Shown: in pieces, positions 3,844 through 9,604 of the stretch
How positions within the stretch are numbered: position 1 is the stretch's first letter
How the letters are laid out: every line of letters begins with the position of its first letter
Source: Octopus sinensis
Taxonomy: Eukaryota
DNA: 64,000 nt
Assembly (NCBI RefSeq): GCF_006345805.1
Contig: NC_043020.1
Span: 9,796,001 to 9,860,000 of the forward strand
Reading direction: 5' to 3'
Position numbers and translations under genes: made by a program
The notes under the pieces: model-generated
What the model saw: the letters and a program-made list of their open reading frames with translations, nothing else
The model's database searches: none
Told to the model about the DNA's origin: nothing

Positions 3844-4011
3844 TTGTGTGTCTCTCTGGACAAGGTTCGCAAGGGGTATTCCACGCCTTTGCAACAGAAC
3901 AGCAGCACATCATTTTGGTCAAATTACCAGACAGTTCATTTTCACAGATAAGATCGTGCGGCCAACTGGTTGATTTATAGTAAGTGGAATAGCAGTTTCC
4001 TTTACGCATAT
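3844..4011 (-). CDS. fbn: Fibrillin exon: TB (8-Cys) domain, TB5-equivalent, [56 protein letters not shown]
   Basis: ttgttag acceptor, gtaagt donor, 168 nt, CCC triplet and AW..PCE.CP motif of TB domains. Confidence 0.95.
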
Positions 4012-4029
4012 CTAACAAACAAAAAATAA

Positions 4030-7000
4030 AAGATACAAGGAACATAAGTTTATGTGGCCACAATGTAAAAGACACAAGGAATATAAGTTCATGTGGCCAC
4101 AATGTAAAAGACACAAGGAGCATAATTTCATGTGGCCACAATGTAAAAGACACAAGGAACATAAGTTCATGTGGTCACAACGTAAAAGACACAAGGAACA
4201 TAAGTTCATGTGGCCACAATGTAAAAGACACAAGGAATATAAGTTCATGTGGCCACAATGTAAAAGACACAAGGAACATAAGTTCATGTGGTCACAACGT
4301 AAAAGACACAAGAAACATAAGTTCATGTGGCCACAATGTAAAAGACACAAGGAATATAAGTTCATGTGGCCACAATGTAAAAGACACAAGGAACATAAGT
4401 TCATGTGGTCACAATGTAAAAGACACAAGGAACATAAGTTCATGTGGCCACAATGTAAAAGACACAAGGAACATAAGTTCATGTGTCACAACGTAAAAGA
4501 ACACAAATAAGTTCATGTGGCCACAATGTAAAAGACACAAGGAATATAAGTTCATGTGGCCACAATGTAAAAGACACAAGGAACATAAGTTCATGTGGTC
4601 ACAATGTAAAAGACACAAGGAACATAAGTTCATGTGGCCACAATGTAAAAGACACAAGGAACATAAGTTCATGTGGTCACAACGTAAAAGACACAAGGAA
4701 CATAAGTTCATGTGGCCACAATGTAAAAGACACAAGGAACATAAGTTCATGTGGCCACAATGTAAAAGACACAAGGAACATAAGTTCATGTGGTCACAAC
4801 GTAAAAGACACAAGGAACATAAGTTCATGTGGCCACAATGTAAAAGACACAAGGAATATAAGTTCATGTGGCCACAATGTAAAAGACACAAGGAACATAA
4901 GTTCATGTGGTCACAACGTAAAAGACACAAGGAACATAAGTTCATGTGGCCACAATGTAAAAGACACAAGGAATATAAGTTCATGTGGCCACAATGTAAA
5001 AGACACAAGGAACATAAGTTCATGTGGTCACAATAAAAGACACAAGGAACTAAGTTCATGTGGCCACAACGTAAAAGACACAGGAACATAAGTTCATGTG
5101 GTCACAACGTAAAAGACACAAGGAACATAAGTTCATGTGGCCACAATGTAAAAGACAAGGAATATAAGTTCATGTGGCCACAATGTAAAAGACACAAGGA
5201 ACATAAGTTCATGTGGTCACAACGTAAAAGACACAAGGAACATAAGTTCATGTGGCCACAATGTAAAAGACACAAGGAATATAAGTTCATGTGGCCACAA
5301 TGTAAAAGACACAAGGAACATAAGTTCATGTGGCCACAACGTAAAAGACACAAGGAACATAAGTTCATGTGGTCACAACGTAAAAGACACAAGGAACATA
5401 AGTTCATGTGGCCACAATGTAAAAGACACAAGGAATATAAGTTCATGTGGCCACAATGTAAAAGACACAAGGAACATAAGTTCATGTGGCCACAACGTAA
5501 AAGACACAAGGAACATAAGTTCATGTGGTCACAACGTAAAAGACACAAGGAACATAAGTTCATGTGGCCACAATGTAAAAGACACAAGGAATATAAGTTC
5601 ATGTGGCCACAATGTAAAAGACACAAGGAACATAAGTTCATGTGGCCACAATGTAAAAGACACAAGGAACATAAGTTCATGTGGCCACAATGTAAAAGAC
5701 ACAAGGAACATAAGTTCATGTGGCCACAATGTAAAAGACACAAGGAACATAAGTTCATGTGGCCACAATGTAAAAGACACAAGGAACATAAGTTCATGTG
5801 GCCACAATGTAAAAGACACAAGGAACATAAGTTCATGTGGCCACAATGTAAAAGACACAAGGAGCATAATTTCATGTGGCCACAATATAAAAGACACAAG
5901 GAATATAAGTTCATGTGGCCACAATGTAAAAGACACAAGGAACATAAGTTCATGTGGCCACAACGTAAAAGACACAAGGAACATAAGTTCATGTGGTCAC
6001 AACGTAAAAGACACAAGGAACATAAGTTCATGTGGCCACATGTAAAAGACACAGGAATATAAGTTCATGTGGTCACAACGTAAAAGACACAAGGAACATA
6101 AGTTCATGTGGCCACAATGTAAAAGACACAAGGAATATAGTTCATGTGGTCACAACGTAAAAGACACAAGAACATAAGTTCATGTGGCCACAATGTAAAA
6201 GACACAAGGAACATAAGTTCATGTGGCCACAATGTAAAAGACACAAGGACATAAGTTCATGTGGTCACAACGTAAAAGACACAAGGAACATAAGTTCATG
6301 TGGCCACAATGTAAAGACACAAGGAACATAAGTTCATGTGGCCACAATGTAAAAGACACAAGGAATATAAGTTCATGTGTCACAACGTAAAAGACACAAG
6401 GAACATAAGTTCATGTGGCCACAATGTAAAAGACACAAGGAACATAAGTTCATGTGGCCACAATGTAAAAGACACAAGGAATATAAGTTCATGTGGCCAC
6501 AACGTAAAAGACACAAGGAACATAAGTTCATGTGGCCACAATGTAAAAGATACAAGGAATATAAGTTCATGTGGCCACAACGTAAAAGACACAAGGAACA
6601 TAAGTTCATGTGGCCACAATGTAAAAGATACAAGGAACATAAGTTCATGTGGCCACAATGTAAAAGACACAAGGAACATAAGTTCATGTGGCCACAATGT
6701 AAAAGATACAAGGAACATAAGTTCATGTGGCCACAATGTAAAAGACACAAGGAACATAAGTTCATGTGGCCACAATGTAAAAGACACAAGGAACATAAGT
6801 TCATGTGGCCACAATGTAAAAGATACAAGGAACATAAGTTCATGTGGCCACAATGTAAAAGACACAAGGAACATAAGTTCATGTGGCCACAATGTAAAAG
6901 ACACAAGGAACATAAGTTCATGTGGCCACAACGTAAAAGACACAAGGAACATAAGTTCATGTGGCCACAATGTAAAAGATACAAGGAACATAAGTTCATG

Positions 7001-9075
7001 TGGCCACAATGTAAAAGACACAGGAACATAAGTTCATGTGGCCACAATGTAAAAGACACAAGGAACATAAGTTCATGTGGTCACAACGTAAAAGACACAA
7101 GGAACATAAGTTCATGTGGCCACAATGTAAAAGATACAAGGAATATAAGTTCATGTGGTCACAATGTAAAAGACACAAGGAACATAAGTTCATGCGACCA
7201 CAACGTAAAAGACACAAGGAACATAAGTTCATGTGGCCACAATGTAAAAGATACAAGGAATATAAGTTCATGTGGTCACAATGTAAAAGACACAAGGAAC
7301 ATAAGTTCATGTGGCCACAACGTAAAAGACACAAGGAACATAAGTTCATGTGGCCACAATGTAAAAGATACAAGGAATATAAGTTCATGTGGCCACAATG
7401 TAAAAGACACAAGGAACATAAGTTCATGTGGTCACAACGTAAAAGACACAAGGAACATAAGTTCATGTGGCCACAATGTAAAAGACACAAGGAACATAAG
7501 TTCATGTGGTCACAATGTAAAAGACACAAGGAACATAAGTTCATGTGGTCACAACGTAAAAGACACAAGGAACATAAGTTCATGTGGCCACAATGTAAAA
7601 GACACAAGGAACATAAGTTCATGTGGTCACAACGTAAAAGACACAAGGAACATAAGTTCATGTGGCCACAATGTAAAAGATACAAGGAATATAAGTTCAT
7701 GTGGCCACAATGTAAAAGACACAAGGAACATAAGTTCATGTGGCCACAATGTAAAAGACACAAGGAACATAAGTTCATGTGGTCACAATGTAAAAGACAC
7801 AAGGAACATAAGTTCATGTGGCCACAATGTAAAAGATACAAGGAACATAAGTTCATGTGGCCACAATGTAAAAGATACAAGGAACATAAGTTCATGTGGC
7901 CACAATGTAAAAGACACAAGGAACATAAGTTCATGTGGCCACAATGTAAAAGACACAAGGAACATAAGTTCATGTGGCCACAACGTAAAAGACACAAGGA
8001 ACATAAGTTCATGTGGCCACAATGTAAAAGACACAAGGAACATAAGTTCATGTGGCCACAATGTAAAAGATACAAGGAATATAAGTTCATGTGGCCACAA
8101 TGTAAAAGACACAAGGAACATAAGTTCATGTGGCCACAATGTAAAAGACACAAGGAACATAAGTTCATGTGGCCACAGCGTAAAAGACACAAGGAACATA
8201 AGTTCATGTGGCCACAATGTAAAAGACACAAGGAACATAAGTTCATGTGGCCACAACGTAAAAGACACAAGGAACATAAGTTCATGTGGCCACAATGTAA
8301 AAGATACAAGGAACATAAGTTCATGTGGCCACAATGTAAAAGACACAAGGAACATAAGTTCATGTGGCCACAGCGTAAAAGACACAAGGAACATAAGTTC
8401 ATGTGGCCACAATGTAAAAGATACAAGGAATATATGTTCATGTGGCCACAATGTAAAAGACTCAAGGAACATAAGTTCATGTGGCCACAATGTAAAAGAT
8501 ACAAGGAATATAAGTTCATGTGGCCACAACGTAAAAGACACAAGGAATATAAGTTCATGTGGCCACAATGTAAAAGATACAAGGAATATAAGTTCATGTG
8601 GCCACAATGTAAAAGACACAAGGAACATAAGTTCATGTGGCCACAACGTAAAAGACACAAGGAACATAAGTTCATGTGGCCACAATGTAAAAGATACAAG
8701 GAATATAAGTTCATGTGGCCACAATGTAAAAGACTCAAGGAACATAAGTTCATGTGGCCACAATGTAAAAGATACAAGGAATATAAGTTCATGTGGCCAC
8801 AACGTAAAAGACACAAGGAATATAAGTACATGTGGCCACAATGTAAAAGATACAAGGAATATAAGTTCATGTGGCCACAATGTAAAAGACACAAGGAACA
8901 TAAGTTCATGTGGCCACAACGTAAAAGACACAAGGAACATAAGTTCATGTGGCCACAATGTAAAAGATACAAGGAATATAAGTTCATGTGGCCACAATGT
9001 AAAAGACTCAAGGAACATAAGTTCATGTGGCCACAATGATAAAGACACAAGGAACATAAATTCATGTGGCGAAGA
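4030..9075. repeat. Intronic 39-bp minisatellite, about 130 copies, consensus gtaaaagacacaaggaacataagttcatgtggccacaat
   Basis: Directly visible tandem array; the 13-codon unit explains all long ORFs between 4012 and 9179. Confidence 0.98.
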
Positions 9076-9119
9076 GGTTGATTTATAGCAAGTGGAATAA
9101 CAGTTTCCTTTATGCATAT
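9061..9119 (-). pseudogene. Degenerate duplicate of the 5' third of fibrillin TB exon 3844-4011 (MHKGNCYSTCYKSTSSPHE), acceptor AG changed to AC
   Basis: Aligns to 3955-4011, and its upstream intron aligns to 4012-4040; tgtttgttac vs tgtttgttag; no donor site. Confidence 0.85.
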
Positions 9120-9604
9120 GTAACAAACAAGAAGTAAAAGACACAAGGAATATAAAGAAGAATATTGTTTAATGTACATTGTATATAGTTATGTGCTACT
9201 AAAGTTTCATGCACTGAAGGTGTTATCTAGGCAAGTTTTCAAATGTGCCTAGTGTCTCCAAGCAATCTTAAGGTTCTGGGCACATAGCCTATACAAGTTA
9301 TGAATCAGGACAATAGAACAAGAGAAATCAGAGGGAAAAAGAAGATGAAGGTGGGTTCCAAAATTAGAATAATGCAAAAAACCCCCCAAAAAACCAAACC
9401 CAGAAAAGGCATGGAAAAAAGAAAAGATTTCTTTCTTTTTCGGTTTTGTTTTTGCATCATTCCACTTTTTGAACTCACCTTCATTTAGTGTGATTTCTCT
9501 GATTGACTAAATACTTGAATTGGGTGCTGAAGCATGGCCACAATTCAGTGAGTGAAACTAGTGCAAGAATAAAAGGAAAAAAGAACTGACAAATATATAC
9601 GAAC

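What the first reader, a model, noticed from the sequence alone, without database searches (positions are those of the whole stretch)
3955..9150. A 5-kb minisatellite apparently born from the junction of a partial fibrillin exon duplication
Seen: on the gene strand the unit is ATTG-TGGCCACATGAACTTAT-G-TTCCTTGTGTCTTTTAC. Its first half matches the middle of the TB exon (TGGCCGCACGATCTTAT; exon peptide WPHDLI versus repeat peptide WPHELM). Its second half matches the intron just before that exon's acceptor (TTCCTTGTATCTTTTAT). The array starts inside a decayed copy of the exon's 5' third (9061-9119) and ends by running into the real acceptor region. Inference: a ~100-bp intron-exon segment was tandemly duplicated, a deletion produced a 39-bp chimaeric junction unit, and that unit amplified about 130-fold. 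Both parent sequences survive at the two ends, giving an unusually complete record of satellite origin.
Basis: partly seen in the sequence, partly recalled or inferred. Interest (0 to 1): 0.75.

Follow-up and report, generated by a model that had tools for sequence, protein, structure and literature searches.

The report
Intron minisatellite born from exon-intron duplication
A 5-kb run of 130 copies of a 39-base unit inside an intron of a fibrillin-like gene is built from a piece of the next exon joined to the tail of the intron, so this one locus preserves how a tandem-repeat array was born; it is a clean example of a known process, not a new kind of element.

Summary
On the minus (gene) strand, 130 units of ATTGTGGCCACATGAACTTATGTTCCTTGTGTCTTTTAC fill 9076..4026. 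This is 90% of the 5,593-bp intron between a cbEGF exon (9727..9605) and a TB-domain exon (4011..3844) of a fibrillin-like gene.

The array sits between two ungapped 96-bp copies (81/96 identical) of one intron-exon segment, a-b-c:
- a is a 17-bp pyrimidine tract.
- b is the acceptor plus the exon's 5' part.
- c is 17 bp of exon.

The unit is c + G + a + ATTG, so the locus reads a b (c a)x130 b c. Outside the array, the a-half and c-half each match once in the 64-kb window, exactly in register.

The exon is the parent. All three of its CpGs are decayed in the upstream copy and the array, and the upstream copy's acceptor AG is AC.

Blocks of 3, 4 and 7 units that are 99.6-100% identical show later growth by multi-unit duplication.

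Its "deletion" step is possible but not shown. Only the a-to-c joint is new, and I could not derive it.

New points are a 10-bp palindrome at that joint and a unit with no AG. I could not test other loci, other species or raw reads. This is a new member of a known kind, of moderate interest.

The parts
9605..9727 (-). Upstream cbEGF exon ([41 protein letters not shown]), phase 1-1. Its donor GT is at 9604-9603.
   Evidence: Pfam EGF_CA E=6.9e-9. Boundaries CACAG|AC... and ...ATGG|GTTCGT. Spliced to the TB exon, it aligns end to end with human fibrillin-1 cbEGF22-TB4 (1UZJ, E=5.5e-26).
4012..9604 (-). The intron that holds the array: 5,593 bp. About 485 bp would remain without the array and the extra copy.
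   Evidence: The 485-bp figure is my own subtraction: 5,593 minus 5,108, the distance between the two copy starts (9150 and 4042).
9152..9158 (-). TCTTTAT, directly upstream of copy A. It is a direct repeat of TCTTAT at the end of the c segment (3953..3948). It is a candidate for the microhomology that mediated the 96-bp duplication, and it also resembles a branch point (yUnAy).
   Evidence: Read from the sequence. It matches 6 of 7 with one indel, so it is suggestive only.
9055..9150 (-). Copy A, the decayed 96-bp copy of the intron-exon segment. a = 9150..9134 (exact a-half); b' = 9133..9073 (dead acceptor plus pseudo-exon DMHKGNCYSTCYKSTS); c' = 9072..9056, which is also the first array unit's c-half.
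   Evidence: 81/96 ungapped identity to 4042..3947. b' scores 89 against a shuffle maximum of 25.
9120..9121 (-). Inactivated acceptor of the pseudo-exon: AC where the real copy has AG.
   Evidence: Difference no. 31 in the 96-bp comparison: 9120 C versus 4012 G.
4026..9076 (-). The 39-bp minisatellite: 130 units of ATTG + TGGCCACATGAACTTAT + G + TTCCTTGTGTCTTTTAC, 38% GC. The consensus has no AG and no CG. Each unit carries the palindrome TGTGGCCACA at unit positions 3-12.
8492..9037 (-). Two copies of a 7-unit (273-bp) higher-order block, unit types HEACEDI, followed by a partial third copy.
   Evidence: The two copies differ at 1 of 273 positions. Lag-7 distance is 1.00 against 2.3-3.1 at the other lags up to 12.
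5148..5613 (-). Three copies of a 4-unit (156-bp) block, unit types DABC. Three-unit DAB blocks follow further downstream.
   Evidence: The first two copies are identical (0 differences in 156); the third is 154 bp because one of its units carries a 2-bp deletion, and was not compared base by base. The 117-bp DAB blocks are identical.
3947..4042 (-). Copy B, the functional 96-bp copy. a = 4042..4026 (also the last array unit's a-half); b = 4025..3965, with the acceptor AG at 4013-4012; c = 3964..3948, inside the exon.
3844..4011 (-). TB-domain exon, 168 bp, phase 1-1: [56 protein letters not shown]. Its donor GT is at 3843-3842.
   Evidence: Pfam TB E=5.3e-14; alignment to FBN1 TB4; translation.

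Best explanation
**What it is.** It is a single-locus intronic minisatellite that arose in place from the gene's own sequence. I assign it no function.

**Step 1 (shown).** A 96-bp segment spanning the 3' end of the intron and the first ~64 bp of the TB exon was duplicated in tandem, giving a-b-c-a-b-c. Here a is the pyrimidine tract, b is the acceptor plus the exon start, and c is an exon loop codon block. Inferred: slippage between the short direct repeat TCTT(T)AT, found just upstream of a and at the end of c, caused the duplication. This is the Haber-Louis type of origin.

**Step 2 (shown).** The upstream copy became a dead pseudo-exon. Its acceptor AG is now AC, and all three of its CpGs have decayed. 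It differs from the working copy at 15 of 96 positions, so the duplication is old.

**Step 3 (inferred; path unresolved).** The 39-bp stretch across the duplication joint (c + G + a) acquired a second copy. This created the only truly new joint, a-ATTG-c.

**Step 4 (shown by the pattern of variant units).** The array then grew to 130 units by repeated unequal exchange or slippage of blocks of 1, 3, 4 and 7 units. Many of these blocks are still 99.6-100% identical, so turnover is recent and probably ongoing. The edge units are the most diverged.

**Why it is tolerated (inferred).** The unit has a pyrimidine tract and branch-point-like CTTAT but no AG. It therefore adds no usable 3' splice sites upstream of the real acceptor.
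For: - **Array:**
- **Two 96-bp copies bracket the array:** they align ungapped at 81/96. The b' segment alone scores 89 against a shuffle maximum of 25.
- **Unit halves:** each half has exactly one out-of-array match in 59 kb. Both are on the gene strand and in register: a is exact at 9150..9134, and c has 3 mismatches at 3964..3948. Chance expects 0.015 and 0.29 matches per window at any position.
- **Direction:** the CpGs at 4006, 3960 and 3956 are CA, CA and TG in copy A, and two of the three differences between the exon's c and the array's c are these CpG transitions. The acceptor G at 4012 is C at 9120.
- **The exon is real:** Pfam TB and EGF_CA matches. The spliced product aligns continuously with human fibrillin-1 cbEGF22-TB4 at E=5.5e-26.
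- **Growth in blocks:** the variant map reads JHEACEDIHEACEDIHEAC...DABCDABCDABDAB..., with lag-7, lag-4 and lag-3 minima. Blocks differ at 1/273, 0/156 and 0/117 positions.
- **AG content:** the 5,051-bp array has 4 AGs, and the last 1,038 nt before the acceptor are AG-free.
- **No known RNA:** no Rfam family or tRNA in or near the array.
- **General models of minisatellite initiation:** summarised in PMC3389668 and PMC5615363.
Against: - All the evidence comes from one assembled haplotype.
- I found no sequence from another species or individual, and no genome-wide view.
- The ATTG linker cannot be derived from the parental sequences by simple prefix-plus-suffix joining (my reading), so step 3 is unresolved.
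- The flanking direct repeat is only 6 of 7 with an indel, in AT-rich DNA, and could be chance.
- The base after the c-half is G in 99 units, but A in the upstream flank and in 30 units. The simplest slippage model predicts A.
- Twelve units carry 1-5 bp deletions, clustered at units 70-78, 101-104 and 118-119. These may be long-read consensus errors, so the exact length and fine detail of the array are uncertain.
Confidence: 0.8

Rival explanations
1. The first duplication was larger, for example the whole TB exon with flanking intron. A later deletion joined c to a, and only then did the joint amplify. On this view the 96-bp period comes from the deletion, not from the original event. This is.
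For: It cannot be excluded from one sequence. Homology between copy A and copy B stops exactly where the array begins, as this order of events would also predict.
Against: It needs one more event. Both copies are exactly 96 bp in register, and the TCTT(T)AT direct repeat sits exactly at the two ends of the 96-bp segment, as expected if that segment itself was the duplicated unit. No trace of the rest of the exon lies upstream of or within the array.
Confidence: 0.1
2. The array belongs to a dispersed satellite or a transposon-borne tandem-repeat family that landed in this intron. Its resemblance to the exon and intron would then be coincidence, or the result of later gene conversion.
For: TE-derived minisatellites are common (PMC3389668). 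The window is full of dispersed repeats, such as a SINE-like element with 12 copies. I could not search the rest of the genome.
Against: - Both halves of the unit match local unique sequence in register, in two copies separated from the array by the 61-bp b segment.
- There are no target-site-like or terminal structures.
- The unit does not occur elsewhere in the 64 kb.
- It has 0 hits in the metagenome collection.
Confidence: 0.04
3. It is an assembly artefact. The array, or much of its length, or the pseudo-exon, was produced by mis-assembly of repetitive long reads.
For: Units with 1-bp deletions come in clusters, and the same deletions recur in different units (units 70 and 119; units 53, 78 and 103). 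This looks like systematic consensus error. Tandem repeats are a known source of assembly error (PMC6868369, listed).
Against: - The array has an ordered internal structure: different block types in different parts, diverged edge units, and variant sites confined to parts of the array.
- The two bracketing copies differ at 15 sites, including biologically sensible CpG decay, so they are not duplicated reads.
- The only N gap in the window is 14 kb away, at 23519..23618.
Confidence: 0.06
4. The array is kept because it does something. It might act as a splicing or transcription-rate modulator: 130 pyrimidine tracts with branch-point-like motifs could act as decoys or as distant branch points for the TB exon.
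For: Each unit has CTTAT and TTTAC (yUnAy-like) plus a 17-nt pyrimidine-rich tract and no AG. The likely branch point of the real acceptor (CTTAT, A at about 4044, 32 nt upstream of the AG) now lies in the exon-derived half of the last unit.
Against: There is no evidence of constraint. Indels are tolerated, turnover is fast, and a random 39-mer of this composition would lack AG about one time in five (my own estimate). There are no expression data.
Confidence: 0.08

Closest known systems
Haber & Louis 1998 model of minisatellite origin: a segment flanked by 5-10 bp direct repeats is duplicated by slippage or unequal exchange, then expands (as summarised in PMC3389668)
   Same: The ancestral 96-bp segment is bounded by TCTTTAT and TCTTAT. 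A first duplication was followed by expansion through unequal exchange of blocks.
   Different: The unit that expanded is not the segment first duplicated. It is the 39-bp stretch across its joint. The direct repeat is imperfect (6 of 7).
[quoted passage not shown]
   Same: Birth from unique sequence by mispairing of short separated repeats. The array ends in partial units: it starts with a c-half and ends with an a-half.
   Different: That model gives units colinear with the parent sequence. Here the unit is a permuted chimaera (c before a), which needs the earlier duplication.
Hypervariable human minisatellites (VNTRs) with variant-repeat maps; higher-order repeats of satellites (PMC2897807, listed; PMC5615363)
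   Same: The unit lies in the 10-100 bp range. The locus is euchromatic and intronic. A few variant sites define unit types arranged in duplicated blocks, and the edge units are more diverged.
   Different: The unit is AT-rich (38% GC) and has no G-rich core. Length polymorphism has not been tested.
New repeats arising from satellite junctions (Mravinac & Plohl 2007, Tribolium madens; seen only as a reference title in PMC5615363)
   Same: A junction between two sequences becomes the seed of a new repeat.
   Different: Here the junction is between an exon piece and an intron piece of a single-copy gene, not between two existing satellites. I did not read that paper.
TE-derived minisatellites (PMC3389668)
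   Same: A tandem array derived from a recognisable parent sequence that survives at the flanks.
   Different: The parent here is a gene's own exon-intron boundary, not a mobile element.

Membership tests
Minisatellite (tandem repeat, unit 10-100 bp) | Head-to-tail array of a 10-100 bp unit | tested here: met
   39-bp unit, 129.8-130 copies, 94% matches.
Minisatellite (tandem repeat, unit 10-100 bp) | Internal variant repeats arranged in a map or in blocks | tested here: met
   Five main variant sites and 13 unit types. Blocks of 7, 4 and 3 units.
Minisatellite (VNTR sense) | Copy number varies among individuals | not testable with these tools
   Only one haplotype is available. No reads or other assemblies could be reached.
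Satellite DNA family (multi-locus, heterochromatic) | Arrays at many loci or long heterochromatic blocks | not testable with these tools
   There are no copies elsewhere in the 64-kb window and 0 hits in metagenome contigs. The host genome itself could not be searched.
Haber-Louis type origin | A 5-10 bp direct repeat flanks the segment first duplicated | tested here: inconclusive
   TCTTTAT (9158..9152) versus TCTTAT (3953..3948): 6 of 7 with one indel, in AT-rich sequence.
Local origin from a tandem duplication joint | Both parents are present in register on both sides, with the unit equal to the end of copy 1 plus the start of copy 2 | tested here: met
   The locus reads a b (c a)x130 b c. 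The copies are 96 bp and 81/96 identical, and the out-of-array matches are unique.
TE-derived tandem repeat | The unit or its flanks belong to a dispersed mobile element | tested here: not met
   The flanks are the gene's own exon and intron copies. The unit is absent from the rest of the window, although a SINE-like repeat occurs 12 times there. This is only a window-scale test.
Fibrillin/LTBP family (host gene) | Alternating cbEGF and 8-Cys TB domains | tested here: met
   Pfam TB matches (E=5e-14 and 3e-9) and EGF_CA matches on minus-strand exons. The best solved-structure match is human fibrillin-1 cbEGF22-TB4-cbEGF23 at E=5.5e-26, with LTBP1 at 7e-19.
Fibrillin proper (versus LTBP or another TB-domain protein) | Full domain architecture and orthology | not tested
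   Only part of the gene lies in the window, and no homologue was returned by the protein database.

The most novel reading that the evidence does not exclude
The joint unit took off because of what the joint created by chance. The new a-to-c linker, together with one CpG decay (TGGCCG to TGGCCA), made a perfect 10-bp palindrome, TGTGGCCACA, once per unit. Neither parent has more than a 4-bp palindrome at this place. In single-stranded DNA, palindromes of neighbouring units can pair and loop out whole units. Three units fold at -19.6 kcal/mol against -7.1 for shuffles (z=-5.7). This favours slippage in steps of 39 bp.

The unit also has no AG, which makes it invisible as a 3' splice site. Selection therefore did not stop the expansion, even though the unit multiplies a pyrimidine tract and a branch-point-like motif 130-fold right in front of a real acceptor.

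If so, the locus would show which sequence properties decide whether a fresh duplication joint stays a two-copy scar or becomes a satellite.
Probability: 0.2. Interest if true: 0.6.

Novelty: new member of a known kind. Interest (0 to 1): 0.4.

Why it matters
How minisatellites start is much less well documented than how they grow. PMC3389668 calls initiation "very difficult to study".

This locus keeps, within 5.2 kb:
- both parental sequences;
- the first duplication (two 96-bp copies);
- the dead acceptor of the extra copy;
- the chimaeric unit;
- the block-wise growth pattern.

Relative ages can be read from it as well. The two copies differ by 16%, while the blocks inside the array differ by 0-0.4%.

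The duplication looks old, so related species may hold the intermediate states: a plain 192-bp duplication, or two or three units. That would turn an inferred sequence of events into an observed one.

It is also a natural test of how much pyrimidine tract and branch-point sequence an intron can carry upstream of an acceptor when no AG is added.

It does not reveal a new class of element or a new function.

Tried and rejected
1. **Cross-species and other-individual data: nothing usable.**
   - The protein database returned no candidate for the exon ORF.
   - An exact scan of metagenome contigs for the unit found 0 matches.
   - A back-translated scan for the exon found one unrelated TB exon, 33% identical and without the unit (L001).
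   - I ran no further search on the repeat peptide. The database evidently lacks this organism, so a negative result would say nothing.
2. **Older decayed units upstream of copy A: rejected.**
   - 9300..9151 against three units scores 14, against a shuffle mean of 13.5.
   - 9560..9151 scores 20; 76 of 1000 shuffles do as well.
3. **Deriving the ATTG linker from b's first and last bases: failed.** No combination fits better than 3 of 6 without indels, on my reading.
4. **A structured RNA or RNA gene in the array or intron: none found.** There are no Rfam matches at gathering score in 1..12000 and no tRNA-like genes.
5. **The repeat peptide as a protein domain: no.** There is no Pfam match apart from one chance-level hit at E=0.094. 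Four of six frames are open in the consensus unit, but indels break them.
6. **Lack of AG as a statistically remarkable property: no.** It is an all-or-none property of a single 39-mer, with a chance of roughly 0.2 by my estimate.
7. **The second-half TB exon downstream (1..3843):** a simple motif scan did not find it.

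
Full report
**1. What is in the sequence**

Tandem Repeats Finder reports one dominant array in the window: 4027..9070, period 39, 129.8 copies, 94% matches.

I parsed the array unit by unit on the minus strand.
- There are 130 units from 9076 to 4026 (5,051 bp).
- 118 units are exactly 39 bp, and 12 carry 1-5 bp deletions.
- 46 units are identical to the consensus ATTGTGGCCACATGAACTTATGTTCCTTGTGTCTTTTAC.
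- The mean difference from the consensus is 1.2 per unit, and mean pairwise identity is 94.7%.
- A 29-mer of the unit with up to 3 mismatches occurs 121 times, all inside the array, with 0 expected by chance.
- The only run of N in the window is at 23519..23618, far from the array.

**2. Gene context**

The gene runs on the minus strand. Cysteine-rich open segments on that strand include several cbEGF exons and two TB-domain exons. Pfam confirms them:
- TB at E=5.3e-14 for the exon next to the array;
- TB at E=3.4e-9 for the exon near 14000;
- EGF_CA at E=7e-9 and 4e-11 for two cbEGF exons.

The array lies in the intron between a cbEGF exon (9727..9605, donor GT at 9604) and a TB exon (4011..3844, acceptor AG at 4013-4012, donor GT at 3843). 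Both exons are phase 1-1.

The two exons joined give ...[13 protein letters not shown].... This aligns continuously with human fibrillin-1 cbEGF22-TB4 (PDB 1UZJ, E=5.5e-26); LTBP1 follows at 7e-19. "Fibrillin-like" is therefore justified, but orthology to fibrillin proper was not tested.

The intron is 5,593 bp, and the array is 90% of it.

**3. The flanks**

On the gene strand the locus reads: a (9150..9134), b' (9133..9073), then 130 units of [c, G, a, ATTG], then b (4025..3965) and c (3964..3948).
- a = TTCCTTGTGTCTTTTAC, a pyrimidine tract.
- b = the last 14 nt of the intron, with the acceptor, plus the first 47 nt of the exon.
- c = 17 nt of exon, TGGCCGCACGATCTTAT.

The two 96-bp copies, 9150..9055 and 4042..3947, align without a gap at 81/96. 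The b' segment alone, which shares nothing with the array unit, matches the real acceptor and exon at 52/57. Its score is 89, against a shuffle mean of 14.3 and maximum of 25.

Outside the array, the a-half of the unit has one match in the whole window. It is exact, at 9150..9134. The c-half also has one match, with 3 mismatches, at 3964..3948. First-order Markov simulations of the non-array sequence give 0.015 and 0.29 such matches per window at any position, and here both fall in register in the two copies.

The locus is therefore a b (c a)x130 b c. That is what amplification of the joint of an a-b-c tandem duplication would give.

One refinement concerns the evidence for the a-half. The 17-mer just before the real acceptor (4042..4026) is physically the last unit's second half. 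The independent witness that a is ancestral intron sequence is the copy at 9150..9134.

**4. Direction and relative age**

The exon copy is the parent.
- All three of its CpGs in the 96 bp (at 4006, 3960 and 3956) are CpA, CpA and TpG in the upstream copy.
- Two of the three differences between the exon's c and the array's c are these same CpG transitions, and both are synonymous in the exon (CCG to CCA, CAC to CAT).
- The upstream copy's acceptor is AC instead of AG (9120 C versus 4012 G), so the pseudo-exon cannot be spliced in.
- An unrelated TB exon on a metagenome contig also starts with DMRKGNCY but differs in the following loop. This fits the idea that b encodes an old, conserved start of the domain and c a variable loop.
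- In the alignment to human TB4, c falls in the loop that carries the RGD motif there. That TB4 carries the RGD is from my memory.

The array's c shares the derived states at three sites with copy A but keeps the copy B state at two others. This is expected if the array descends from copy A's c before the boundary unit decayed further.

The two copies differ at 15 of 96 sites (16%; 7 of 61 in b). Blocks inside the array differ by 0-0.4%. The history is therefore an old duplication followed by young or continuing turnover.

**5. How the array grew**

Variation is concentrated at five unit positions: 1 A/G, 7 G/A, 22 G/A, 30 T/A and 31 G/A.

Coding units by these sites gives this map: JHEACEDIHEACEDIHEACFACACAEAACAFFAGAEABABGABEACKACKABAFACAFAAFAFAIALAALAABAAMAMJBCDAAAAAAADABCDABCDABDABCGDABDABAABAGDxCAGDABDABADF.

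- The upstream end is a 7-unit block repeated 2.4 times. Lag-7 distance is 1.00 against 2.3-3.1 at the other lags up to 12, and the two full copies differ at 1 of 273 positions.
- The downstream third is made of DABC and DAB blocks that are identical over 156 and 117 bp.
- The 31A variant occurs almost only in the upstream half.
- The 7A variant occurs only from unit 34 onward.
- The first unit has 7 mismatches and the last has 3, so they are the most diverged.

This is the classical signature of growth and homogenisation by unequal exchange or slippage of one to several units. It matches the general model for satellites and minisatellites (PMC5615363).

**6. The steps that are inferred**

(a) Cause of the first duplication. 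TCTTTAT lies directly upstream of a (9158..9152), and TCTTAT ends c (3953..3948). The ancestral 96-bp segment was thus bounded by a short direct repeat, as in the Haber-Louis model summarised in PMC3389668. The match is imperfect and lies in AT-rich DNA, so I rate it as suggestive only.

(b) The first doubling of the 39-bp joint. The duplication itself makes the c-to-a joint, so no deletion is needed for it. The only new joint is a-ATTG-c.
- A 39-bp slippage duplication would also produce it.
- I could not derive ATTG from the first and last bases of b under either path.

This step stays open.

**7.

First, the consensus unit contains no AG and no CG.
- The 5,051-bp array has only four AGs: three from the 30A variant and one from a deletion.
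- The last 1,038 nt before the acceptor have none.
- Each unit carries a pyrimidine tract and yUnAy-like CTTAT and TTTAC. A unit with an AG would have placed 130 candidate acceptors in front of the real one.
- The absence is not statistically remarkable for a single 39-mer. My estimate of the chance is about 0.2. It still gives a sensible reason why the array is tolerated.
- The likely branch point of the real acceptor (CTTAT, about 32 nt upstream) now lies in the exon-derived half of the last unit.

Second, the new joint plus the decayed CpG created a perfect 10-bp palindrome, TGTGGCCACA, once per unit.
- The parental sequences have only 4-bp palindromes at this place.
- Only 2.4% of shuffled units have a palindrome of 10 bp or more.
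- Three units of single-stranded DNA fold through 10-bp stems between neighbouring units at -19.6 kcal/mol, against -7.1 +/- 2.2 for shuffles (z=-5.7; the other strand gives z=-5.9).
- Hairpins between direct repeats promote polymerase slippage in vitro, according to the abstracts of PMC4134008 and PMC13465473.

I offer this as a possible reason why this particular joint expanded, at about 20% probability.

**8. What could not be tested**

- The protein database holds no relative of the exon ORF.
- The metagenome collection holds no copy of the unit.
- The other collections are viral or prokaryotic.

The clusters of 1-bp deletions (units 70-78, 101-104 and 118-119) recur in the same sequence context. 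They may be long-read consensus errors, so the exact length is provisional. The ordered internal structure and the 15 sensible differences between the two copies argue against an assembly artefact as the source of the whole feature.

**9. Verdict**

This is a real and well-preserved case of a minisatellite born in place from the joint of a partial exon-intron tandem duplication.
- The kind of process is known: initiation by duplication, then unequal exchange.
- The source is uncommon and the record is unusually legible.
- No function is indicated.
- Novelty: a new member of a known kind.
- Interest: 0.4.

Noticed in passing
window 1004-1296: A perfect (100%) two-copy tandem duplication of 145 bp, with only 2-3 bp (AT) of microhomology at its ends. 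It is a young example of the same kind of event proposed as step 1 for the array.
   Followed up: partly
window 20161-21155: A 476-bp unit repeated 2.1 times at 99% identity. It is bounded and separated by (ATT)n/(TTA)n microsatellites at 20157-20231, 20638-20707 and 21114-21155. This looks like unequal exchange between microsatellites.
   Followed up: no
window 13329-13487: An 80-bp unit in 2 copies (98%) that includes (AAT)n(ATG)n runs, close to the second TB exon (13880-14221).
   Followed up: no
window 10240-10664: A decayed minisatellite of about 29 bp (GTACTCTAATAAAATA...), 10-15 copies at 66-82% matches, in the next intron upstream of the cbEGF exon. It is unrelated in sequence to the 39-bp unit.
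   Followed up: no
window 3540-3720 and 11 other places (e.g. 667-686, 19607-19626, 29760-29779, 57566-57585): A dispersed SINE-like repeat with core GGTCGACTTTGCCTTTCATC: 12 copies on both strands against 0 expected. From memory it resembles the abundant octopus SINE, which would make the source a cephalopod. This was not verified with any tool, and ARAGORN finds no tRNA-like gene.
   Followed up: partly
window 3844-4174 (minus strand): Frame 2 of the repeat, ([13 protein letters not shown])n, is in frame with the TB exon, because the 96-bp copy length and the 39-bp unit are both multiples of three. Stop-free stretches of up to 730 codons (6999-9188, -) and ORFs of up to 903 aa (6377-9088, +) cross the array on both strands. 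They are mechanical ORFs, not genes.
   Followed up: partly
window 6042-6386, 5070-5184, 4492-4527: The 12 units with 1-5 bp deletions are clustered. The same deletions recur in different units (GTTGT-GACAC in units 70 and 119; TTCC-TGTG in units 53, 78 and 103). They are either inherited variants or systematic long-read consensus errors.
   Followed up: no
window 23519-23618: A 100-N assembly gap, next to a (TCTA)88 tract (22924-23275) and a (ATAC)241 tract (24145-25102).
   Followed up: no
window 55242-55296: A short degenerate TTAGGG-like tract, 9 copies at 67% matches: an interstitial telomere-like sequence.
   Followed up: no
L001 3377-3526 (JAAUYG010048674.1, metagenome contig): A TB-domain exon from an unidentified eukaryote. 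It begins with the same DMRKGNCY and is 33% identical overall. It has no 39-bp unit.
   Followed up: partly
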